A stretch of 62,958 nt of DNA, filler included, from Octopus bimaculoides (Eukaryota): NCBI RefSeq assembly GCF_001194135.2. It is 3 parts of 3 records of this genome, joined end to end, with 100 filler letters (N's around TTAATTAATTAA, not from the genome) between each part and the next. Parts side by side here need not be neighbours in the genome. Positions count along the whole stretch, not along the records: positions 34,144 to 62,958 come from NC_069000.1; 2 more parts are not named here. The stretch is one strand, 5' to 3'. The notes beneath the pieces were generated by a model. That model ran no database searches and was not told where the DNA came from. It saw only the letters and a program-made list of their open reading frames with translations. Made by a program: the position numbers and the translations under genes. Shown here piece by piece: positions 41,695 through 61,379 of the stretch (position 1 is the stretch's first letter; each line of letters starts with the position of its first letter).

Positions 41695-41744
<50 letters not shown>

Positions 41745-41747
41745 TAT

Positions 41748-42122
41748 CTTTTACTTTTTCAGTCATTAGACTGACTGCAGCCATGCTGGGGCACAACATT
41801 GAAAGGTTTTAGTCGAACAAATCGACCCCAGGGTATTTTTAAGCTTAGAACTTATTCTATCAGCCTCTTTTGCCGGACCGCTAAGGTACGGAGACATAAA
41901 CACACCAACACTGGTCTCAAGCGGTGGTGAGTGACAAGCACACACACAAATACACACACACATATGACAGGCTTCTTTCAGTTTCCGTCAACCAAATCCA
42001 CTCAAAAAGCTTTGGTCGGCCCGAAACTATAGTAGAAGGCACTTACCCAAGGTGCAACGCTGTGCGACTGAACCCGGAACCATGTGTGGTTGGGAAGCAA
42101 GCTTCTTACCACACAGCCACGC
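41748..42122 (-). mobile_element. Near full-length SINE family A
   Basis: Head, CORE-like motif, internal (GT)n and 3' module all present. Confidence 0.92.
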
Positions 42123-42964: not shown

Positions 42965-43963
42965 NNNNNNNNNNNNNNNNNNNNNNNNNNNNNNNNNNNN
43001 NNNNNNNNNNNNNNNNNNNNNNNNNNNNNNNNNNNNNNNNNNNNNNNNNNNNNNNNNNNNNNNNNNNNNNNNNNNNNNNNNNNNNNNNNNNNNNNNNNNN
43101 NNNNNNNNNNNNNNNNNNNNNNNNNNNNNNNNNNNNNNNNNNNNNNNNNNNNNNNNNNNNNNNNNNNNNNNNNNNNNNNNNNNNNNNNNNNNNNNNNNNN
43201 NNNNNNNNNNNNNNNNNNNNNNNNNNNNNNNNNNNNNNNNNNNNNNNNNNNNNNNNNNNNNNNNNNNNNNNNNNNNNNNNNNNNNNNNNNNNNNNNNNNN
43301 NNNNNNNNNNNNNNNNNNNNNNNNNNNNNNNNNNNNNNNNNNNNNNNNNNNNNNNNNNNNNNNNNNNNNNNNNNNNNNNNNNNNNNNNNNNNNNNNNNNN
43401 NNNNNNNNNNNNNNNNNNNNNNNNNNNNNNNNNNNNNNNNNNNNNNNNNNNNNNNNNNNNNNNNNNNNNNNNNNNNNNNNNNNNNNNNNNNNNNNNNNNN
43501 NNNNNNNNNNNNNNNNNNNNNNNNNNNNNNNNNNNNNNNNNNNNNNNNNNNNNNNNNNNNNNNNNNNNNNNNNNNNNNNNNNNNNNNNNNNNNNNNNNNN
43601 NNNNNNNNNNNNNNNNNNNNNNNNNNNNNNNNNNNNNNNNNNNNNNNNNNNNNNNNNNNNNNNNNNNNNNNNNNNNNNNNNNNNNNNNNNNNNNNNNNNN
43701 NNNNNNNNNNNNNNNNNNNNNNNNNNNNNNNNNNNNNNNNNNNNNNNNNNNNNNNNNNNNNNNNNNNNNNNNNNNNNNNNNNNNNNNNNNNNNNNNNNNN
43801 NNNNNNNNNNNNNNNNNNNNNNNNNNNNNNNNNNNNNNNNNNNNNNNNNNNNNNNNNNNNNNNNNNNNNNNNNNNNNNNNNNNNNNNNNNNNNNNNNNNN
43901 NNNNNNNNNNNNNNNNNNNNNNNNNNNNNNNNNNNNNNNNNNNNNNNNNNNNNNNNNNNNNNT

Positions 43964-44150
43964 TGACAACCGGTGCTGGTGTGTTTACATTCCCGTAACC
44001 TAGCGGTTCGGCTAAGACCGATAGAATAAGCACCAGACTTATAAAAAGAAAATAAGTATTGAGGTCGATACATTCGACTAAAAATTCTTTCAAGGTGGTG
44101 CCCCAGCATGGCCGCAGTCAAATGACTGAAACAAGTAAAAGACAAAAAAT
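43964..44150 (+). mobile_element. SINE family A 3' half
   Basis: TTGACAACCGGTGCTGGTG..CCAGCATGGCCGCAGTCAAATGACTGAAACAAGTAAAAG. Confidence 0.9.
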
Positions 44151-44547
44151 ATTTTTATATGTGTACATTAATTCCTGTATGTTTACGTGTGTTGCGAAGC
44201 TTGTCTTTACGGAGACACCACTGGGAAAAAATTGGTACTCTAAATTCATGTCTTGTATCCTAACGATTTAACAGAAGCAAATGAAATAAATTTTATGGTC
44301 GATATGATAGACTAAAATTCTAACAGCTCTGCTGCACCCCAACGTTTGATCCCATCACCCCCACTCTCTCCCTTTTATATACCAATGACTTGCCTCCCTC
44401 CGGCAAATGATGCTACCATACAATTTTCCTTAGCTTTCCGCAACGAAACATTATTCACATGCAGACTGGATCGTTGTTTCTAACAGAGAGGGGAGTCTTG
44501 TAAGGATGAAAAAGCCGGAGGATACGTTGACAACTTTTATATTTTAT

Positions 44548-44830
44548 CTTTTACTTGTTTCAGTCATTGAAGAAGTTTAAACAAACAAATCAAGTCCAGT
44601 ACTTTTTAAGCCTGATGGTTTCTTTTGCCGAACCGCTAAGTTGCCAAGCGGTGGTAGGGGACAAACACAGACGCAAAGACACACACACATATATACAACG
44701 TGCTTCTTTTAGTTCCCATCCACTAAGTCCACTTACAAGACTTTGGTTGGTCAGAGGCTATAGTAGAAGACACTTGCACAAGGTGCCGCGCAGTGGGACT
44801 GAACCTGCAACCATCTGGTTGGGAAGCAAC
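44548..44830 (-). mobile_element. SINE family A with internal deletions
   Basis: TTTGCCGAACCGCTAAG..CACTTGCACAAGGTGCCGCGCAGTGGGACTGAACC. Confidence 0.88.
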
Positions 44831-45772: not shown

Positions 45773-45846
<74 letters not shown>

Positions 45847-45854
45847 TGGTGGTG

Positions 45855-45910
<56 letters not shown>

Positions 45911-47489: not shown

Positions 47490-47780
47490 TGATAATTCTA
47501 CCGGTTCATTTTGCCGACCCACTAAGTTATGGGAACGTAAACATACTAACGCCAGTTGTCAAGTGAGGGTGGAGGACATGTGCGTGTGCGCGTGTGTGTG
47601 TGTGTGTGTGTGTGTGTACGACGAGCTTCTTTCAATGTCAGTCTACCAAATCCACTCACGCGGCTTTGATTGGTCCGAGACTATAGGAGAAGACACTTGA
47701 CCACGGTGTCATGCAGAGGGACTGAACCCAGAACCATGTGGTAGGAAACAAGCTACTTACCATACTACCACGCCTGCACT
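47490..47780 (-). mobile_element. SINE family A
   Basis: TTTTGCCGACCCACTAAG..GAAGACACTTGACC..GGGACTGAACCCAGAACCATGTGG. Confidence 0.87.
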
Positions 47781-49129: not shown

Positions 49130-49270
49130 AAAGTTGCGGAGTTCCAGCTTGAACGGAAGAAGCTTGCTTCCAAGCCATATAGTTCCGGGTTCAGTACCAC
49201 TGCGTGGCACCTTGGGAAAATGTATTCTACTATAGACTCGGGCCGACCAAGGCCCGTCGTATATATGTAC
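49130..49270 (+). mobile_element. SINE family A head
   Basis: TTCCGGGTTCAGTACCACTGCGTGGCACCTTGGG..CTCGGGCCGACCAA. Confidence 0.88.
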
Positions 49271-49415: not shown

Positions 49416-51470
49416 GTGTTCATCTCCATTTTGGATGGAAACACAAAAAAGATATTAGATAAGATCATACGACATATTAGAGCATACTCAAACATTACTC
49501 AGTGGATATGTAGTGCAACTATTGAATGGTTTAAAAATAGATGATATGCCCAAATGCAAATTTATCCAATTTGATATCGTGGAGTTTTACCCCTCGATCT
49601 CCAAAAGCTTACTTCAAAAGGCACTTGAATTTAGTAAGGCAAATAACAAACACTGAAAAAAAGTCATTAGTTTACCATAATAAGCAGTGATATAGATATA
49701 ATGAACGCAGAGAAGTTATTACTTTTTCACGATAATTTCTATTGGGTATAAAAGAATGGGGATGAGCTATTTGGTGTGGCAATAGGGAGCTATGATGGAG
49801 CAGAGATAGCTGGCCTTATAAGCCTTTATATCCTAGATATCCTTAGAAAAGAAATAAGAGGCCAACATGGCTTTATATAGGGACGATGGCCTGGGAGTAA
49901 TACACAATAAAAACGGACACGATATGCACAGGATAAGAAAAAATTATGCAAAATATTTAACCAATTCGGTCTAAGAACCACAATTAGGACCAACCTTAAA
50001 AAAGTCAACTTCCTAGATATTAACATGAACCTTAGTACAGGCCAATCTAAAGCCTACCACAAACCAAATGAGGAAGCCTCGTACGTAGACATAGGCTCCA
50101 ATCGCTCACCAGCAGTCATTAAACAATTAACTAATAACATCAGCAGACGCGACTCGAATCTATCCGCCGATAAAGACACTTTTGAAAAAGCTGCCCATAT
50201 CATAATGCTGTATTAGATAGGTCCAACTTCAAGAATAGCATAAACTACATTGAACCAAATGCAGATAGATCAAGAAGACGTAGATGGGGGAAAACTTACG
50301 GTTTAACCCACTTTATAGCATAAATGTAGCCACTAACATAATTAGGAAATTCTTTAAATTAATGGAAAATCATTTCCCATATTCACACAAATACCATAAG
50401 ATCTTCAACAGAAACACTGTTGAAGTTAACTATAGTTGCCTCCCCAATATAGTGTCAATAATACTCAACCACAATAAAAAATAAGCACACCAGAAATACC
50501 CCCGAAAGACTCTGTAACTATAGATCTCCAAACTGCTGTCCTCTAAATAATAACTATCCGCAAAAAGAACTTATATATAAGGCCAAAATCATGGCTCCCA
50601 ACAGAGTAACAAAGACACATATCAGAATAACGAGCAACTTGTTCAAGCAAAGATACACACAACACGTGACGTCATTCAGGAATAAAAATAAAAGACATGT
50701 GACATCCTTATCCAATATGATATGGACATTGAAAGAAGACGAAATAAGCAACTCTTAGATAACATGGAGCATCATTGCTAAAGCCTGAAAATACAGAGAG
50801 CGGTGTACCACATGTGACCTCTGTATCACTGAAAAACTAAATATCATACAGTCAACAGATAACATCCTAAATATTAGGAATGAAACATTTTCTCCCTGCA
50901 TACACAAGCAATATTTCACACTCCGACATTTCAAAGAGGAAGCACCACCCGTGCCGCTAACCTCGCCAGGATAGTTTCTTTCTCTGAACTTGAACATTGA
51001 ATAATATACAACACACGAACTCCTCACATAGAAGAAACACACGTTATGAATTCCCTCAGCACACAAACATACGAACATCACAAATACACAGAATATGATA
51101 CTATATAATACAAATTCATCAACCAACACTTTTTTCTCCAAATGGCAAAATCAAGGGAGATAATCATTCAAAAGGTGTCACCCAAGAGTTGCGCCCCTTG
51201 ATATTATATTTACTTTACGAGGCTTTTTATGAACTTCCGAGATTTTTTCCGAGACCGTTTTGTGTTTTCATCCAAAATGGAGATGAACACAACTTATTAC
51301 ATCTGGTAAAGTACGGAACAAGAAAATTTTTACTTAAAACATTGCAGCTAAGAATAAAATTTCAAATAAAATCTTTGGATTTAGAAAATATTAGCTTTAT
51401 TAAAACTAAAAATTTCATTACAAGTTATTACTTCTATTTGTTATTACTTGTTACTTCAATTAAAAAATAA
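49416..51470 (+). mobile_element. 5'-truncated Penelope-like element: RT + GIY-YIG pseudogene (Naiad-like), 3' pLTR and inverted 5' segment
   Basis: KFIQFDIVEFYPSIS; GSYDGAEI; LYRDDGL; VNFLDINMNL; YHKPN; FNPLYS.NV.TNI; IFNRNTVEVNYSCLPN; CN.R..CCPL..IYKA; FKQRYTQH..SF; CDLCITEKL..CIHK; 33-bp inverted repeat at 49416-49448 / 51258-51290. Confidence 0.93.
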
Positions 51471-51751
51471 TAGTAGTAATAATTAGTTTGTGCAATAAAT
51501 AAAATAATACAAAAATTAGTTATATATTACAGTAAAATCTACCTTAACCAACAAATTCACAGTAAAATTTGCTTGAGCTATCGCCTAAGTTATTGCCAAA
51601 TCTTCACATTTTTAGTCTTGACCCAATGCTTATTTTTTACATAATGAATTTGCCTGCCATATATAGTATTCTTACTTTCCATAAAGCTTTAGCTGTATTA
51701 ATACTTCTGGTTCTCATTTTTTTAGCTGCAATATTTTAAGTGAAAATTTTC

Positions 51752-51838
51752 TTGTTCTGTACTTTACCAGATGTAATAATTTGTCCTGAACTTTTCCAAA
51801 TGTAATAGCTTGTCCTGTACTTTTCTAGATTTATAATC
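51752..51838. repeat. 29-bp diverged minisatellite, 3 copies
   Basis: TTGT(T/C)CTG(T/A)ACTTT..A.AT.TA(A/T)A.. units at 51752, 51781, 51810. Confidence 0.8.
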
Positions 51839-53183: not shown

Positions 53184-54087
53184 NNNNNNNNNNNNNNNNN
53201 NNNNNNNNNNNNNNNNNNNNNNNNNNNNNNNNNNNNNNNNNNNNNNNNNNNNNNNNNNNNNNNNNNNNNNNNNNNNNNNNNNNNNNNNNNNNNNNNNNNN
53301 NNNNNNNNNNNNNNNNNNNNNNNNNNNNNNNNNNNNNNNNNNNNNNNNNNNNNNNNNNNNNNNNNNNNNNNNNNNNNNNNNNNNNNNNNNNNNNNNNNNN
53401 NNNNNNNNNNNNNNNNNNNNNNNNNNNNNNNNNNNNNNNNNNNNNNNNNNNNNNNNNNNNNNNNNNNNNNNNNNNNNNNNNNNNNNNNNNNNNNNNNNNN
53501 NNNNNNNNNNNNNNNNNNNNNNNNNNNNNNNNNNNNNNNNNNNNNNNNNNNNNNNNNNNNNNNNNNNNNNNNNNNNNNNNNNNNNNNNNNNNNNNNNNNN
53601 NNNNNNNNNNNNNNNNNNNNNNNNNNNNNNNNNNNNNNNNNNNNNNNNNNNNNNNNNNNNNNNNNNNNNNNNNNNNNNNNNNNNNNNNNNNNNNNNNNNN
53701 NNNNNNNNNNNNNNNNNNNNNNNNNNNNNNNNNNNNNNNNNNNNNNNNNNNNNNNNNNNNNNNNNNNNNNNNNNNNNNNNNNNNNNNNNNNNNNNNNNNN
53801 NNNNNNNNNNNNNNNNNNNNNNNNNNNNNNNNNNNNNNNNNNNNNNNNNNNNNNNNNNNNNNNNNNNNNNNNNNNNNNNNNNNNNNNNNNNNNNNNNNNN
53901 NNNNNNNNNNNNNNNNNNNNNNNNNNNNNNNNNNNNNNNNNNNNNNNNNNNNNNNNNNNNNNNNNNNNNNNNNNNNNNNNNNNNNNNNNNNNNNNNNNNN
54001 NNNNNNNNNNNNNNNNNNNNNNNNNNNNNNNNNNNNNNNNNNNNNNNNNNNNNNNNNNNNNNNNNNNNNNNNNNNNNNNNNNNNNNA

Positions 54088-55915
54088 GAAGAAGAAGAAG
54101 AAGAAGAAGAAGAAGAAGAAGAAGAAGAAGAAGAAGAAGAAGAAGAAGAAGACGGGAGTGATATTAGCCAGTAGTAAAGGTTGTTTGTGGAATCTGCTTT
54201 AATGGTCAAGTGGCCTTACGGTGACCTGTTGTGGTTATAGTCTGTTATAAATAAATTCGTGGGTAGCGACTATTCTAAATATATTTATCGTGGGTATTAT
54301 TCCAAGATCCCTGTAGTAATGTCATCTATAGTAAAAGCATTCAAAAGAGGTTTATATTTTGCGATAAAATATGATTCTTTGCTAATGCGCTGGGAGATTG
54401 AGTGACACACGACAAAGAAGTAATACCCCAACACACACACAACAGCAAAGTAATAAGAAATCACTACCCACAGGATAGACATTACAACCTCTCCCTCACC
54501 ATAAGGAGATAGCAACGTAATTTTTGTTCCAACAGTCCACTTAACAACCATGCACAACTAACCCATACAACACGAAATAATTACCAACGACGGTCCTCTA
54601 AAGCACCACATCCGAACATGAAATATAGGAACACACTGTTCAACCCCCATCCAAGAACCTGCACCAGAAATCACAGCAGGGAACTACACAATAAGAGAGG
54701 ACAACTAGATAACAGCTACCGTCCCAACCACCTCAGTCATTTTTTAGACCCAGTACACAGATATAGCACCAGACATACAGGAATAACCAAAAGTGATAAA
54801 AGTCGTCAATGTAACACCTAAAGAACTATCACCAGACCAAATCAACATACTCTCCAAAGGGCTCAAATTTATACCACCACCACCAACACCACCAACACCA
54901 CCAACACCCAACGTCCAAACTACAACGAAATGAAAGACGTCGCGGAAGATTACGACTCGCCGAGGAACTATACGACAAACACAACGAGGACGAATCGTTA
55001 GCCAGAAATAGAACTACACCCCATCAAAAAGTAAGAACACAATTCTTGACCATTTCTGTGAACCCATCATGAATTATCCATATCAACACATACACAGACA
55101 AAAGTACAAGCCAAGCTTCAGCAAGAAAGAATGGGTTGAGCTGAACAGATTAAAGGATGATAAAACAATAACAATCAAAGAGGCTGATAAAAGAAGTGTA
55201 GTTGTCTTAATGAACACGGTATTCTATATAACTCTAGTACTATCCATATTAGAAGACACAGCATATTATGAAAAGGCCCAACACTACAGTTCGCAGAAAA
55301 TAATGAGAAACCTAAAAACTATGTGAAACCTATACAGAGAAGGGCTCACCGACGAGGAATACGACTATAAGACTAACTTCAAAAGTAAATCCAATCAATT
55401 CTACGATATTCCTAAGATACATAAAAGTGAAAAATAAGTAACACACGCAGGGGAATCACAAATATAATAGTCGAGGTACCCCCACCTAATGACCTCAAAT
55501 TAAGACCTATAATAGAAGGCCCCGCATGCGAAACTCACCGTCCCAGTAACTTTCTAGATACCCTCTTAAAACCATTCCTCAAGCATATCAAAACCTACAT
55601 AAGGAACGCTCAGCCACCTCCCTGAAACAATTAATAAAAAAACCCTACTAGTACCCTTCGATGTAGTCAACCTGTACTCTAATATCCCCCGTAACCTAGG
55701 AATAGAGGCAATCCAATTCTGGCTAGAGAACTACTCCAATGACCTCCCAAAGTGCATCGAAAAAGAATTCGTAATAGAAGGGCTAAAATTCATCTTGAAG
55801 AATAATAGCCACTTGACCATTAAAGCAGATTCCAAAACCGGCTTTTACTACTAGGTAATACCACTTCCGTCTCTTTCTTCTTCTTCTTCTTCTTCTTCTT
55901 CTTCTTCTTCTTCTT
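54088..55915 (+). mobile_element. Penelope-like (Neptune/Poseidon-type) relic with inverted terminal arms and an internal deletion
   Basis: Plus strand: ILSKGLKFIP, IKEADKRSVVVLM, FYDIPKIHK, LRPIIEGP, FDVVNLYSNIP. Minus strand: KESYFIAKYKPLLN (EN C-terminus). 27-bp perfect IR at 54188-54214 / 55808-55834 extending into (GAA)n/(TTC)n. Confidence 0.88.
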
Positions 55916-57210
55916 TTCCCCCTCCCTCTTCTTCGCCTTCTCTTTCTTTAGCTGCTGCTGCTTAGACCATCAAACTTCAGAACCAAATATATCTTTGCAC
56001 CCATAAACACACTTTTTCAGATCTGCTACTACCTACCTCCCTTACGAACCTTCACAAAAGAAAAAAGAGAGAGACACAGAAAAAAGGAAAATGTCCCACC
56101 TATTTGGAGACTATGGAAATATTTACAAAACATTTCATTTAAGTTTTTCTTCAATTTAATTGTTTATCGTCTTAATTAATATCCACCTTTGTTTTACTCT
56201 TAGTTNNNNNNNNNNNNNNNNNNNNNNNNNNNNNNNNNNNNNNNNNNNNNNNNNNNNNNNNNNNNNNNNNNNNNNNNNNNNNNNNNNNNNNNNNNNNNNN
56301 NNNNNNNNNNNNNNNNNNNNNNNNNNNNNNNNNNNNNNNNNNNNNNNNNNNNNNNNNNNNNNNNNNNNNNNNNNNNNNNNNNNNNNNNNNNNNNNNNNNN
56401 NNNNNNNNNNNNNNNNNNNNNNNNNNNNNNNNNNNNNNNNNNNNNNNNNNNNNNNNNNNNNNNNNNNNNNNNNNNNNNNNNNNNNNNNNNNNNNNNNNNN
56501 NNNNNNNNNNNNNNNNNNNNNNNNNNNNNNNNNNNNNNNNNNNNNNNNNNNNNNNNNNNNNNNNNNNNNNNNNNNNNNNNNNNNNNNNNNNNNNNNNNNN
56601 NNNNNNNNNNNNNNNNNNNNNNNNNNNNNNNNNNNNNNNNNNNNNNNNNNNNNNNNNNNNNNNNNNNNNNNNNNNNNNNNNNNNNNNNNNNNNNNNNNNN
56701 NNNNNNNNNNNNNNNNNNNNNNNNNNNNNNNNNNNNNNNNNNNNNNNNNNNNNNNNNNNNNNNNNNNNNNNNNNNNNNNNNNNNNNNNNTTATATAGTTT
56801 ATTGAAACTGAATGTTTATCTCGCGAGTATCACGCCACTTCGATCTCCATTTGCATATCTCAATGCGTATACATGCACTTATTACATACTAAATTACTGA
56901 ATGTTTTACAGCGCCATTAAAGGCGTTGTAAATATTCGATGCTAAAAATATTCTAATTTGGCTTGTTCTTTCTTATTGTGTGAAAGCCAGCTTTGCAACA
57001 TTTGTACTGAATCAATTAGGTACATATCCAAGAGCTCCAATAACCATTGGTCAAAATCTAAAGTTATAGACCACATGAGTAACTGCATATATGTATGCAT
57101 GTATGTATGTATGTATGTATGTATGTATGTATGTATGTATGTATGCATGTGTTATGTGTGTGTGTGTTTATGTGTATATATTAATGTATCTGTAAATCTA
57201 TGTGTGTGTA

Positions 57211-57275
<65 letters not shown>

Positions 57276-57719: not shown

Positions 57720-57958
57720 ACATAATAATCCAACTGCTTGTTCCAATCCCCTCTCCACGCCACCGATGTTATCCAAGGGAAAGGCAAAGGCCGATACAGC
57801 TTGGCACCAGTGACATCGCAACTCATTTCTACAGCTGAGTAAACTGGAGCAACGTGAAATAAAGTGTCTTGCTCAAGAACACAACATGCAGCCCGGGCCG
57901 GGATTCGAATTCACAACCTCACGGTCGTAAGTTCGATGCTCTAACCACTGAGCCACTG
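57720..57958 (-). mobile_element. SINE family E (tRNA head, CORE-like)
   Basis: Minus strand TGGCTCAGTGGTTAGAGC (A box)..ATTCGAATCCC (B box)..TTCTTGAGCAAGACACTT. Confidence 0.9.
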
Positions 57959-58827
57959 AACATTATTATATATAAAGAATAATATTATATGCGTATGTCC
58001 AAGGTGTCCCTCAGTGGGACCGAACCCGAAACCACGTGGCTACAAAGCGGATTTCTTAACTACACAGCCATAATGTATGTACACGCATACACACATTTAC
58101 ATAATATCTGCAGAAATAATAAGTAACCGCAACTTTCACATTACGCCATCCCCAAACACAGATGCACAAACAAGGACTGTCACATGAGACACAGTCAGAC
58201 GTTCACGCGCAGACACAGATGCATATATCTTGTCTGCGCATGAATTCTTCCCTGTATGACACACACACACATACACACACACACACACATCCAGGAACAT
58301 CAGCAAAAGAAATTATTTGTGAGAAAAGACAACAGTAAAAGTAACTCTAGATATAATGAATGTTTACGACAAGGAACGGCTAGCGAGGGGGGGAGATACC
58401 ACGATGCTTCGAAGAGAGAAAGAAATTATAGAGAATCGTTTCACAAAAACGTGTTGTGTGGGAAGGGCAAATTATACAAACGATGAGTAAGAGGGATGAA
58501 AGACTATACATACATGGGCGCAGTCATGATTGAGGGGATTAAGTCCGCTTTGCACCCATCTGGTTTCAAGTTCAGTCTTACTGCATGGTACCTTGGGAAA
58601 GTGTCTTCTACTATAGACCCTGACCGACAAATGCCTTGTGAGTAAATTTGGCAGGCGAAAATTGCGCGCGCGCGTGTGTGTGTGTTTCCCCAACCGCTTG
58701 ATAACTGGTGTTGTTACGTTTATGCCTCTGCAAATTAGCAGTTCGGCTAAAGAACCGATAGGACAAGTACTAGTGCTAAGGTCGATTTGTTTGACTAAAA
58801 CCCCTTAAGGCGTTACCCATGCATGGC

Positions 58828-59673
58828 TGGGATCTTTCTGAATTGACGGGCGCCATTTTTATTTATGTTTTATTTAGTGTATTTTCTACTGAAACACTTT
58901 CAAACTTCGTATACTTGTATATTTTGTGTTATAGAACAGATAAAAAAAATTTTGTATTCGAAGTTATTTCATGTAAAAAAAATTGTCGTATTTCGGAAAT
59001 TACAACCAATCACTGACGTCTATTGAGGTGAAAACAATTACTGCTATGGATTGTAAACAAAATATTGAGCGGTGTAATGGGATCTTTTCCCTTGAATAAA
59101 ATTAGTGCCGTTGTTTGTCAACAACAACTATCCGCGGTACTGTTATTTATAACATCGTTCGTGCGTTTGTACTGGTTTTAGCTTTAGGGTTTTAGGGTTA
59201 GGGTTCGGGTTTTAGAGTTAAGGTTAGTTTTAGAGTTAGGGTTAGGGTTATGATTATTTTTGCCATAACCTAACTCATAACCCTAACCCTAACCCTAACC
59301 CTAACCCTAACCCTAACCCTAACCCTAAAACCCAAACCCTAACCCTAACTCTAAAACCCGAACCCGAACCCTAAAACCCTAAACCCTTACTAGGGAATAA
59401 CGATATAATTACTAGGGAATAACGATCTTGACACCGGCAAAAATTATTGTTTACAAAAACAGCAGTAACTGTATTCAGCTGAATAGACGTCAGTGATTGG
59501 TTGAAATTACAGAAATACGACAACTTTAACATGAAATAACTTGCAATATAGAAAGTTTTGTTAAGAAGGCTAAGAGAAAAAGATGTTTTATATGACACAT
59601 TCTACTAGTATCCCAAGTTTGAAAGTGTTTCGTTGAGAAAACAAGTGGCGCCCGTCAATTCAGAAAGATCCCA
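58828..59673. mobile_element. 846-bp non-autonomous fold-back DNA transposon with a telomeric-repeat core
   Basis: 28-bp perfect TIR TGGGATCTTTCTGAATTGACGGGCGCCA (58828-58855 / 59646-59673); TSD TGGC (58824-58827 / 59674-59677); ~250-bp imperfect arms; no ORF. Confidence 0.93.
59183..59387. repeat. Head-to-head telomere-like array: (TTAGGG)-type 59183-59253, 21-nt spacer, (CCCTAA)-type 59275-59387
   Basis: 8 perfect CCCTAA units at 59281-59328; TTCGGG and TTTTAGAG variants in both arms. Confidence 0.95.
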
Positions 59674-60394
59674 TGGCAGCAATTCAATGACTGGAACAAG
59701 TTAAAAGTTAAAAGATAACAGTAAAGAAGTTTACAACATACGAGTGCAATGATACGAATTTTACAAATCAAAAACACGGAATAAAGGAAGAAGTTTAAAG
59801 CAATAATTCAAAAAGATATCTATATAAAATTTTAAACATCCACCTGTGTTGATCGTGGTACTCCATATTCCAAATTAAGCCACCACTTTGTTTCCTTCTT
59901 GTGATGTTTCTAGCCGGGAAATTCAAGAATCTCCTTTAAGGACTCTTGTAGAGCCATGTTCTCTGCAACGTTGACACATAATTATTTCTTAATGTGTATA
60001 AATAACCAGTCCCTTTTATGCTTTTAAAATATTATTCCATTTACTTCATGGTCCGTGAAATAAATGGAATTTATTGTGTATATCGTATAAATGCCTTAAA
60101 AGAATTTTGTTAGTCTCACAAAAGGTTGCGAAATCCATTTCGTTTTTGGAGGAGCCTAGAAAACCCTCCTCCTCTTATGCGCCTGTGATTGATTATGGTA
60201 GGCTAGCAGCTGCCTTGTAAACATTATGTGCTAGGCTCTCAATGTAGAGCATTTTGGCGGAATTTGAACTCAAAAAGTAAAGGGTAAATTCTACAAGGTA
60301 TTTTGTCCCAAACTCTTGCACTTCTACCAATACGATAAAATATTGGTGCAGATTTAATTAGCACCAATACTTGACACTACTTTATCTTATGAAC

Positions 60395-60540
60395 CGTCGA
60401 AGACACGTGGCCTAGTGGTTAGAGAGCTGCTCTCACGATCCCTAGATCGTGGTTTCAATTCCTAGGCTGGGTGGTGTGTTATGTTCTTCAAAATACTTCA
60501 TCTCGCGATGATCTGCGATCACTTCGACATCTGACGTGTG
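60395..60540 (+). mobile_element. SINE family E-like head
   Basis: GTGGCCTAGTGGTTAGAG..CTCACGATC..GGTTTCAATTCC. Confidence 0.72.
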
Positions 60541-60795
60541 ATAAACACACCACCATCGGTTGTTGTCAAGCTATGTTGGGGAACAAACACAGACACACAA
60601 ACACACATATATATATATGCATATACATATATACGACGGGCTTCTTTCAGTTTCCGTATACCAAATCCACTCATAAGGCTTTGGTCGGCCGGAGGCTATA
60701 GTAGAAGACACTTGCCCAAGGTGCCACGCAGTGGTACTGAACCCGGAACCATATGGTTGGTAAGCATGCTACTTACCACACAGTCACTCCTGCGC
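60530..60795 (-). mobile_element. SINE family A
   Basis: GACGGGCTTCTTTCAGTTTCCG..GACACTTGCCCAAGGTGCCACGCAGTGG.ACTGAACCCGGAACC. Confidence 0.92.
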
Positions 60796-61379
60796 CTATT
60801 TTTTTTTTTTTTAATCCGGGGTGAGGAGTCGGGGTTTTGATAACCCATTTTAAATAGTTAAAATAGTATGATGATAACTTTTAAAGGATTTCGGGTTGGC
60901 GCTTCTTTTTTTTTTCTTCTTCTTTTTTCGTGAGCAAGAATATATTTTGAAATTTGTAGAAAAGACGGTATAACATAACTTTTGGGGTTTTTTTTAAATA
61001 TCGCTAATAACATGCATATGATGTCTGTTGCTATAAACAACTAACTCATCAAAACAAGAACAGGATAAACGTAGCTGCAATAACAACAAAAAGGCAGCGA
61101 CTACACCAAAATCAAATGAGTCATCATCCACAACAACAATAATAACAACAACAAAAATAACAACAAGCAGCCAATAAACAATCAACAATCAGGACAGTAT
61201 GAAGAGCTTCAAAACAGACAAATCTACGTGCTATAAATGACTGCCAAATCCCTTTTGACTCACACCCTATCGCCCAAAAGTTTGAGGGAGAAATGCAATT
61301 AGAAGATAGGAAGATGATGTAAACTTAGATACTACGGGTTTTAAAAAAATATATAAAAAAACACAGATGAAGTTCCTGG

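What the first reader, a model, noticed from the sequence alone, without database searches (positions are those of the whole stretch)
58824..59677. Fold-back DNA transposon with TG...CA ends, 4-bp TSD and a telomeric core, caught inside a SINE
Seen: 28-bp perfect TIRs, TGGC duplication, exact restoration of the host SINE on removal, ~250-bp arms that are clearly homologous but substantially diverged with indels, an internal echo of the TIR start (TGGGATCTTT at 59078), an 18-bp direct repeat (59387, 59409), and no coding capacity. Known: TG...CA termini, long TIRs and 4-bp TSDs are features of Ginger-type transposons, although those usually start TGT; an alternative parse (GGG...CCC ends, imperfect 6-bp TSD) is less parsimonious. 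Inference: a mobile unit, younger than the SINE, that disperses telomere repeats and promoter motifs together. TTAGGG-like internal repeats occur in non-autonomous elements of other animals, so novelty needs checking.
Basis: partly seen in the sequence, partly recalled or inferred. Interest (0 to 1): 0.8.

Follow-up and report, generated by a model that had tools for sequence, protein, structure and literature searches.

The report
Fold-back transposon with telomere-repeat core
An 846-bp non-coding, hairpin-shaped DNA transposon whose middle is two head-to-head runs of telomere-type repeats sits inside an older short interspersed repeat; the structure is real, but its family, copy number and transposase could not be checked, so it is an unusual ordinary mobile element rather than a proven new kind.

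Summary
The element is window 58828-59673 (846 bp). It has perfect 28-bp terminal inverted repeats (0 expected by chance) flanked by a TGGC duplication. Removing it plus one TGGC restores the host interspersed repeat without a gap, judged against two copies of that repeat elsewhere in the piece. The whole unit folds back on itself (z = -25.5). The arms are 74% identical with indels, yet the terminal 28 bp are identical (P about 2e-4). That points to ends kept intact by transposition.

The core is (TTAGGG-like)n then (CCCTAA-like)n, with the G-rich strand running towards the centre from both sides. The two arrays match unit by unit, with variant units on the outside and canonical units next to a 7-nt loop.

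The best reading is a non-autonomous fold-back TIR transposon that makes 4-bp duplications, superfamily unresolved. The Ginger attribution fails the published TGTNR end rule and both Ginger target preferences. Sola1, Kolobok, piggyBac and Mutator- or P-type fold-backs also fail.

No second copy could be retrieved from any collection available here, so mobility as a family, novelty against Dfam/Repbase and the "promoter motifs" remain untested. Interest is moderate to low.

The parts
58517..58827 (+). 5' part of the host short interspersed repeat (SINE-like), interrupted by the element
   Evidence: blastn finds at least 6 other copies in the piece. Alignment A1 with paralogous copies.
58824..58827 (.). 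Left copy of the target-site duplication, TGGC
   Evidence: Sequence. One copy is needed for the host repeat to stay gapless across the join in A1.
58828..58855 (+). Left terminal inverted repeat, 28 bp perfect (TGGGATCTTTCTGAATTGACGGGCGCCA); starts TG
   Evidence: 2 matches, 0 mismatches, 0 expected. Extends to 36 nt at 92% (I11).
58828..59173 (+). Left arm (non-telomeric), homologous to the reverse complement of the right arm
   Evidence: A2. 74% identity outside the TIR, with indels.
59003..59024 (+). 22-nt block identical in both arms (CAACCAATCACTGACGTCTATT), holding a CCAAT motif and a CRE-like TGACGTC; left copy
   Evidence: Run-length test P about 0.06, so conservation beyond chance is not shown.
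59078..59087 (+). Internal echo of the TIR start (TGGGATCTTT), in the left arm only
   Evidence: The counterpart in the right arm is degenerate (A2).
59174..59257 (+). G-strand telomere-like array (TTTAGGG, TTTTAGGG, TTAGGG, TTCGGG, TTTTAGAG ... TTAGGG TTAGGG TTATGA TTAT). Variant units lie outside, canonical units next to the centre.
   Evidence: TRF rows 59174-59250. Unit parsing. Sequence.
59258..59264 (.). Centre of the palindrome, a 7-nt loop TTTTGCC
   Evidence: Sequence: TTATGA-TTAT-[TTTTGCC]-ATAA-(CCTAAC)-TCATAA. The MFE fold reaches the centre.
59265..59387 (+). C-strand telomere-like array, including 8 perfect CCCTAA units; collinear unit by unit with the left array
   Evidence: TRF rows 59269-59387. 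CCCTAA positions and unit order. Inverted pair I5, 55 nt at 89%.
59387..59430 (+). 22-bp tandem duplication (18 nt identical: TTACTAGGGAATAACGAT), in the right arm only
   Evidence: D3
59388..59673 (-). Right arm (non-telomeric)
   Evidence: A2
59482..59503 (-). Right-arm copy of the 22-nt identical block
59646..59673 (-). Right terminal inverted repeat, 28 bp perfect; the element ends CA
59674..59677 (.). Right copy of the target-site duplication, TGGC
59678..59717 (+). 3' part of the host interspersed repeat (…AATGACTGGAACAAGTTAAAAG…)
   Evidence: A1

Best explanation
Window 58828-59673 is one insertion of a non-autonomous class II (cut-and-paste, TIR) transposon with a fold-back architecture. 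Almost the whole 846 bp is one long imperfect inverted repeat.

How it most likely works (inferred): a transposase encoded elsewhere recognises the 28-bp ends, excises the unit, and joins it to a target cut with a 4-nt stagger. Gap repair then gives the TGGC duplication. The target here was an older copy of an abundant short interspersed repeat.

The superfamily cannot be assigned from one copy. It is a 4-bp-duplication element with TG...CA ends that does not fit the published Ginger, Sola1, Kolobok/piggyBac, Mutator-type or P-type fold-back signatures.

The core is two telomere-type arrays head to head, inherited as part of the arms.
- Shown: the two arrays are collinear unit by unit.
- Shown: variant units lie outside and canonical units at the centre.
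- Shown: the G-rich strand runs 5'->3' towards the centre on both sides.
- Shown: the loop is only 7 nt.
- Inferred: a single ancestral half, [TIR - about 300 bp - telomere-like array], was copied in inverted orientation, by fold-back priming or a hairpin at a break, or by sister-chromatid fusion. That gave a unit with two matching ends which a transposase could move.
- Inferred: the arms then diverged in the lineage of source copies, while the ends were held constant by the need to be recognised.
For: - Perfect 28-bp TIR, 0 expected by chance.
- TGGC on both flanks.
- The host repeat is restored without a gap across the join when the element plus one TGGC is removed, judged against two paralogous copies (A1).
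- End-to-end fold, z = -25.5.
- Arms are 74% identical with 4 indels of 3 nt or more in the unique part, yet the terminal 28 of 28 bases are identical, P about 2e-4 under uniform divergence. This argues for constraint on the ends.
- No ORF over 75 aa and no protein relatives, so it is non-autonomous.
- The telomere-like arrays are collinear, with shared variant units TTCGGG and TTTTAGAG in the same order. Canonical units lie next to the centre, and both arrays end in TTATGA (I5, 49, 64).
- The G-strand polarity is that of a chromosome end on each side (PMC9071541).
- A fold-back structure with tandem repeats in the arms and a small non-coding middle is a known, repeatedly evolved transposon form (PMC4079207).
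Against: - Only one copy is visible. There is no second copy in the 28.8-kb piece. None was found in the metagenome, viral or prokaryote-genome scans, and none through ORF-based look-ups. These collections probably hold no DNA from the source organism, so the absence says nothing about copy number.
- No transposase partner is known.
- The duplication length (4, 5 or 6 bp) is not fixed by one copy.
- 4 matching bases on their own have a 1 in 256 chance.
- The origin scenario for the core is inference from one sequence.
Confidence: 0.75

Rival explanations
1. It is a non-autonomous Ginger-type element (Ginger1 or Ginger2/TDD), moved by a Gypsy-integrase-like transposase.
For: TG...CA ends and a 4-bp duplication. 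Ginger1 and metazoan Ginger2 make 4-bp duplications and have long TIRs of 40-270 bp and 50-180 bp (PMC2836005).
Against: Both Ginger groups have TGTNR ends; this element has TGGGA. Ginger1 duplications are CCGG or CCGT/ACGG in 99% of 112 copies. Ginger2 targets AT-rich RTATAY/TATA. Here the duplication is TGGC. No rve-type transposase can be linked to the element.
Confidence: 0.08
2. It is not a transposon. A palindromic piece of extrachromosomal or telomere-fusion DNA was captured at a double-strand break and ligated in, and the 4-bp repeat comes from fill-in of staggered ends.
For: Only a single copy is seen. Head-to-head telomere arrays are the signature of end-to-end fusion. Telomere-type repeats are known to be inserted at break sites during repair, sometimes inside SINEs (PMC8537989).
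Against: A captured palindrome should show the same divergence along its arms. Here the terminal 28 bp are perfect while the rest is 74% identical with indels (P about 2e-4). The ends are TG...CA, and the duplication is clean.
Confidence: 0.08
3. The true ends are GGG...CCC, and the duplication is 5 bp (ATGGC) or an imperfect 6 bp (ATGGCT/ATGGCA). The element would then belong to a different group, for example RR...YY-ended Kolobok relatives such as KolobokP solo repeats, which give 3-5-bp duplications in molluscs.
For: The left flank CATGGCT matches a variant seen in a paralogous copy of the host repeat (GCATGGCTGCAG at 41700-42130rc). KolobokP solo LTDRs have RR..YY ends and 3-5-bp duplications and are common in molluscs (PMC9587614).
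Against: This reading needs a later substitution in the duplication, plus the coincidence that the mismatched T and A are complementary. KolobokP LTDRs are about 450 or 660 bp with 11-18-bp TIRs and were not reported from cephalopods. This element is 846 bp with a 28-bp TIR and a full fold-back.
Confidence: 0.06
4. It is a solo LTR of an LTR retrotransposon (TG...CA ends, 4-6-bp duplication).
For: TG...CA ends and a 4-bp duplication fall in the range quoted for LTR elements, 3-6 bp (PMC10045372).
Against: Apart from the common TG..CA at the extreme termini, LTRs have no terminal inverted repeats (PMC9587614). This unit is inverted-symmetric over its whole length.
Confidence: 0.02
5. It is an assembly artefact: a chimeric palindrome in a gapped short-read scaffold.
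For: The piece is a draft scaffold with 3369 N. Palindromes and telomere repeats are hard to assemble.
Against: There are no N inside the element. The two arms differ at about a quarter of positions and by indels, so they are not one read used twice. The flanks join into one continuous host repeat. The length of the central arrays could still be wrong.
Confidence: 0.01

Closest known systems
Fold-back transposons (Drosophila FB, Galileo, Tetris; sea-urchin TU; Chironomus TFB1; Meloidogyne Tm1)
   Same: Nearly the whole element is a pair of long inverted arms. The arms contain tandem repeats. The middle domain is tiny and non-coding, and the element is non-autonomous. The form is thought to arise independently in different superfamilies (PMC4079207).
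   Different: Known fold-backs mostly belong to Mutator (8-10-bp duplications) or P (Galileo). This element has 4 bp. Their arm repeats are element-specific units of tens to hundreds of bp, whereas here they are telomere-type hexamers whose polarity points to the centre.
Ginger1 / Ginger2 DNA transposons
   Same: 4-bp duplication, TG...CA outermost bases, long TIRs.
   Different: TGTNR ends are not met (TGGGA). The target preferences are not met. No integrase-like transposase is linked to this element.
MITEs / short non-autonomous TIR elements
   Same: Non-coding, AT-rich (35% GC), TIR plus duplication, stable hairpin potential (PMC3845634).
   Different: At 846 bp it is at the upper size limit. 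High copy number and family homogeneity, which define MITEs, could not be tested.
Interstitial telomeric sequences (break-repair type and fusion type)
   Same: Short degenerate TTAGGG arrays at an internal site. The head-to-head (TTAGGG)n-(CCCTAA)n order is that of end-to-end fusion.
   Different: Here the arrays are internal parts of a TIR-bounded insertion and are two copies of one ancestral array. They were not added directly at the break and are not two independent chromosome ends.
Telomere-bearing elements of ciliates (TBE) and telomere-tailed Penelope-like retroelements
   Same: Mobile elements that carry the host's telomere-type repeats (the TBE paper PMC4724952 was listed but not read; telomere-tailed Penelope-like elements are described in PMC4522978).
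   Different: In those elements the repeats sit at the outer ends or the 3' tail and take part in end function or priming. Here they are in the centre, far from the ends.

Membership tests
Class II TIR (cut-and-paste) transposon, generic | Terminal inverted repeats | tested here: met
   28 of 28 perfect, 0 expected by chance
Class II TIR (cut-and-paste) transposon, generic | Target-site duplication of fixed short length; empty site restored on removal | tested here: met
   TGGC on both sides. The host repeat runs without a gap across the join against two paralogous copies. A length of 4 versus 5 or 6 bp is not fully fixed by one copy.
Class II TIR (cut-and-paste) transposon, generic | Multiple dispersed copies and an autonomous partner encoding a transposase | not testable with these tools
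   No copy in the piece. The collections searched do not appear to hold the source genome.
Fold-back elements | Long inverted arms making up most of the element, tandem repeats within the arms, short non-coding middle | tested here: met
   A2; fold z = -25.5; hexamer arrays in both arms; 7-nt loop
Fold-back elements of the Mutator or P superfamilies | Duplication of 8-10 bp (Mutator-type; PMC4079207) or about 7 bp (Galileo/P; my own knowledge) | tested here: not met
   The flanking 7-10 nt do not repeat; only TGGC (or ATGGC) does
Ginger1 | 4-bp duplication | tested here: met
Ginger1 | Duplication sequence CCGG or CCGT/ACGG (99% of copies) | tested here: not met
   TGGC against PMC2836005; a single observation
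Ginger1 and Ginger2 | Ends follow TGTNR | tested here: not met
   The ends read TGGGA
Ginger2 | AT-rich target (RTATAY / TATA) | tested here: not met
   Target ...GCATGGCAGC...
Ginger1 and Ginger2 | Gypsy-integrase-like (rve) transposase in autonomous relatives | not testable with these tools
   No autonomous relative is accessible
Sola1 | 4-bp duplication with AWWT preference; TIR starting GG | tested here: not met
   TGGC, and the TIR starts TGGG, against PMC3845634. Sola2 and Sola3 preferences could not be looked up.
Kolobok / piggyBac | TTAA duplication | tested here: not met
   There is no TTAA at either junction,
KolobokP solo LTDR | RR..YY ends, 11-18-bp TIR, length about 450 or about 660 bp, 3-5-bp duplication | tested here: not met
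   The ends fit only under the alternative GGG...CCC reading. The TIR is 28 bp and the length 846 bp.
MITE | Small, AT-rich, non-coding, TIR plus duplication | tested here: met
   846 bp, 35% GC, no ORF over 75 aa
MITE | High copy number and homogeneous family | not testable with these tools
   See the searches above
Fusion-type interstitial telomeric site | Head-to-head (TTAGGG)n-(CCCTAA)n derived from two different chromosome ends | tested here: inconclusive
   The orientation is met (polarity rule). However, the two arrays are unit-by-unit copies of one another, which indicates inverted duplication of a single array rather than two independent ends.

The most novel reading that the evidence does not exclude
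Each half of the element is a fossil chromosome end. A transposon, or its terminal part, was broken and healed by telomerase, or lay next to a telomere. It then carried proximal variant repeats and distal canonical repeats. Fold-back replication or sister-chromatid fusion turned that end into a palindrome with two identical transposon ends, creating a new mobile fold-back family. That family now spreads paired interstitial telomere arrays through the genome, possibly together with a subtelomere-like CCAAT/CRE promoter pointing into the repeats (TERRA-like).
Probability: 0.15. Interest if true: 0.6.

Novelty: new member of a known kind. Interest (0 to 1): 0.33.

Why it matters
If the element belongs to a family of many copies, it would be a concrete vehicle by which telomere-type repeats become scattered at internal sites without any chromosome fusion. 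That matters when interstitial telomeric sites are read as relics of karyotype change. The layout of the core also offers a testable example of how a fold-back transposon can be born from a single transposon end at a broken or healed DNA end. The relevant features are variant repeats outside, canonical repeats at the centre, a 7-nt loop, and two arrays that match unit by unit. If it is a single or low-copy element of a family already catalogued, it is ordinary repeat annotation.

Tried and rejected
**Attempts to fetch more copies all failed.**
- Exact scans for the first 20-22 nt of the TIR in metagenome, viral and prokaryote-genome collections: 0 hits.
- Exact scans for the 22-nt block shared by both arms in the metagenome and viral collections: 0 hits.
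- Look-up of the two longest element ORFs as called genes: none on record.
- Protein search with 418 aa of concatenated open frames from both arms, including WDLSELTGA, the only open frame through the TIR: 4499 word-sharing candidates, none significant.
- Protein search with an ORF derived from the host repeat, meant to identify the organism and pull in more of its DNA: 1 candidate, none significant. This suggests the collections hold no ORF calls from this organism's repeats or non-coding DNA.

**Other checks that gave nothing.**
- Rfam with permissive thresholds over 57800-60900: only sub-threshold miRNA-precursor matches on the telomere palindrome (45 bits against a gathering score of 95). 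I reject these as an effect of the hairpin.
- No tRNA genes in the piece.
- No credible Pfam domain in 10 ORFs of the surroundings, so no transposase is nearby.
- k-mer search for subterminal repeat arrays: only the single TIR-start echo.

**Literature.** Ten searches found no description of a fold-back or TIR element with a head-to-head telomere core, in cephalopods, other molluscs or anywhere else. That is absence in an open-access subset, not proof of novelty. Papers on Sola, on AcademH and the Yuan and Wessler classification were not held.

**Host organism.** From memory, the host repeat looks like the abundant octopus SINE. I could not verify this and do not use it as evidence.
Full report
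**1. What is there**

- The 28-mer TGGGATCTTTCTGAATTGACGGGCGCCA occurs exactly twice in the window, at 58828-58855 on the plus strand and 59646-59673 on the minus strand. None was expected in 100 dinucleotide-preserving shuffles.
- With mismatches the inverted match extends to 36 nt at 92% (I11).
- TGGC lies directly outside both ends, at 58824-58827 and 59674-59677.
- The element proper is therefore 58828-59673: 846 bp, 35% GC, in a piece that is 37% GC.

**2. It is an insertion into an older interspersed repeat**

The flanks belong to a repeat of about 350 bp. blastn finds at least six further diverged copies of it in the 28.8-kb piece.

I aligned the host copy, with the element and one TGGC removed, against other copies of that repeat (A1).
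- The host reads ...CCCATGCATGGC|AGCAAT....
- It runs without a gap across the join against GCCCCAGCATGGCCGCAGT (43930-44190).
- It does the same against GCCCCAGCATGGCTGCAGT (41700-42130rc), which carries its own 4-nt insertion a few bases further on.
- A third copy, 44500-44870rc, is deleted at this point and gives no information.

Keeping both TGGC copies, or neither, would introduce a 4-nt indel. This is direct evidence for insertion with a short target duplication, and it shows the element is younger than that repeat copy.

Two less parsimonious readings remain possible from a single copy:
- a 5-bp duplication, ATGGC, with asymmetric ends;
- GGG...CCC ends with an imperfect 6-bp duplication, ATGGCT/ATGGCA. 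The T at that position also occurs in one paralogous copy.

I call the host repeat SINE-like because of its size and copy density. ARAGORN found no tRNA gene in the piece, and Rfam gave no tRNA match over 57800-60900. From memory it resembles the abundant octopus SINE. I could not verify that and do not rely on it.

**3. Fold-back anatomy**

The left half aligns with the reverse complement of the right half over its whole length (A2).
- As single-stranded DNA the 846 nt pair from the outermost bases to the centre. The energy is -216 kcal/mol, against -74 +/- 5.6 for shuffles, z = -25.5.
- Outside the TIR the unique part of the arms is only 74% identical (157 of 213 aligned bases), with indels of 21, 19, 3 and 8 nt.
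- If that divergence were uniform, the chance that the terminal 28 positions are all identical is about 2e-4.
- The ends are therefore under a constraint the rest of the arms do not feel. That is what transposase recognition predicts, and what a passively captured palindrome or an assembly duplication does not.

The other long identical runs are weaker evidence.
- The 17-nt run arises by chance in about 26% of simulations.
- The 22-nt run CAACCAATCACTGACGTCTATT arises in about 6%.
Its conservation is suggestive at best, and no function is shown.

The only short word present three times in the arms is the TIR start, TGGGATCTTT, echoed at 59078 in the left arm. Its counterpart in the right arm is degenerate. 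There is no array of subterminal repeats. The 18-bp direct repeat at 59387 and 59409 is a 22-bp tandem duplication private to the right arm.

**4. The core**

- From 59174 the plus strand reads TTAGGG-type units towards the centre.
- From 59265 it reads CCCTAA-type units away from the centre.
- So on both arms the G-rich strand runs 5'->3' towards the middle. That is the polarity of a chromosome end (PMC9071541).

Parsed into units, and read from the outside inwards, the two arrays are collinear:
- left: (C)TTTAGGG, TTTTAGGG, TTAGGG, TTCGGG, TTTTAGAG, TTAAGG, TTAG, TTTTAGAG, TTAGGG, TTAGGG, TTATGA;
- right: TTTAGGG, TTTTAGGG, TTCGGG, TTCGGG, TTTTAGAG, TTAGGG, TTAGGG, TTTGGG, TTTTAGGG, (TTAGGG)x8, TTATGA.

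The unusual units TTCGGG and TTTTAGAG occupy the same places in both arrays, and both arrays end in TTATGA. The palindrome then closes on a 7-nt loop, TTTTGCC, at 59258-59264.

Two conclusions follow.
- First, the arrays are two copies of one ancestral array. They are not two unrelated telomeres joined together.
- Second, variant units lie on the outside and canonical units next to the centre. By my own knowledge of human telomeres, that is the proximal-to-distal order of real chromosome ends.

There are no other telomere dimers in the piece.

**5. Mechanism**

Shown:
- TIRs, a duplication and restoration of the host repeat;
- ends constrained relative to the arms;
- no coding capacity (longest ORF 75 aa, longest open frame 76 aa, no protein relatives).

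Inferred:
- The unit is moved in trans by a transposase that binds the 28-bp ends and cuts targets with a 4-nt stagger.
- The fold-back form arose when one half, [end - about 300 bp - telomere-like array], was duplicated in inverted orientation at a DNA end. Fold-back priming or hairpin formation, or sister-chromatid fusion, could do this, and the very short loop fits such routes.
- That gave two matching ends, and the arms later diverged in the source lineage.

**6. Comparison with known families**

| Family | Defining features (source) | This element |
|---|---|---|
| Ginger1 | 4-bp duplications, 99% CCGG or CCGT/ACGG; TGTNR ends (PMC2836005) | TGGGA ends, TGGC duplication; only the 4-bp length and TG...CA agree |
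| Ginger2 | 4-bp duplications (5 bp in TDD); TGTNR ends; AT-rich RTATAY/TATA targets | Same mismatches |
| Sola1 | AWWT duplications, GG-starting ends | Not met |
| Kolobok, piggyBac | TTAA duplications | Not met |
| KolobokP solo repeats | RR..YY ends, 3-5-bp duplications, about 450 or 660 bp, 11-18-bp TIRs; bivalves and basal gastropods | Poor fit, and only under the alternative end reading |
| Classical fold-backs | Mutator-type, 8-10 bp, or P-type (about 7 bp, my own knowledge) | Not met |
| Solo LTR | TG...CA and 3-6-bp duplications, but no inverted repeats beyond the extreme TG..CA | Inverted symmetry over the whole length argues against |

Sola2, Sola3, Academ and Chapaev-type elements also make duplications of about 4 bp (my own knowledge). 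I could not check their end signatures because the papers were not held.

The honest assignment is: TIR transposon, fold-back form, 4-bp duplication, superfamily unresolved.

**7. What could not be done**

Those tests are copy number, consistency of the duplication, an autonomous partner, and comparison with Dfam/Repbase. Neither resource is available here.
- DNA pattern scans of the three public collections found nothing.
- ORF-based routes found nothing.
- Even an ORF from the highly repeated host element found nothing. These negatives therefore reflect what the collections contain, not the element's copy number.
- Ten literature searches found no description of a TIR or fold-back element with a head-to-head telomere core.

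The nearest published phenomena differ in layout:
- telomere repeats added at break sites, sometimes inside SINEs, where the authors concluded that transposons did not spread them (PMC8537989);
- elements that carry telomere repeats at their outer ends or tails (the ciliate TBE paper was listed but not read).

**8. Verdict**

The element is best filed as a new member of a known kind, a non-autonomous fold-back TIR transposon, with an unusual and informative core. Interest is modest unless a genome-wide search shows a family and one-armed relatives at chromosome ends.

Noticed in passing
window 51289-51354 and 51719-51784 (tandem units to 51837): A second inverted repeat has 66-nt arms that are 92% complementary and 364 nt apart. 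The outer 29 nt of the right arm is triplicated in tandem. I saw no clean target duplication. It may be another small TIR or fold-back element.
   Followed up: partly
window 41738-42082(-), 43963-44151(+), 44533-44827(-), 47643-47727(-), 49175-49254(+), 60648-60765(-), host copy about 58517-59717(+): At least seven copies or fragments of one interspersed repeat of about 350 bp, 64-79% identical (87.5% for one 40-nt fragment), lie in 28.8 kb. The repeat has an internal (TG)n/(TATG)n stretch, which suggests a very abundant SINE-like family. From memory it resembles the octopus SINE; this was not verified.
   Followed up: partly
window 58547-58664 and 60648-60765: The host repeat copy and the next copy downstream are in inverted orientation about 2 kb apart (118 nt, 77%). 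They bracket the fold-back element in a larger potential hairpin (I2).
   Followed up: no
window 34144-62958: The piece is a gapped draft scaffold with 3369 N, and it is unusually rich in microsatellites (57 TRF rows). Examples are (TAG)46 at 45773-45910, (AGA)22 at 54087-54152 and (TATG)47 at 57090-57271. No credible Pfam domain was found in 10 ORFs of 93-143 aa.
   Followed up: no
window 59215-59325: The telomere-repeat palindrome gives sub-threshold Rfam matches to miRNA precursor families (MIR8706 at 45 bits against a gathering score of 95; also mir-61 and mir-331). This is most likely a generic hairpin effect. It is also a reminder that such cores could be processed into small RNAs if transcribed.
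   Followed up: partly
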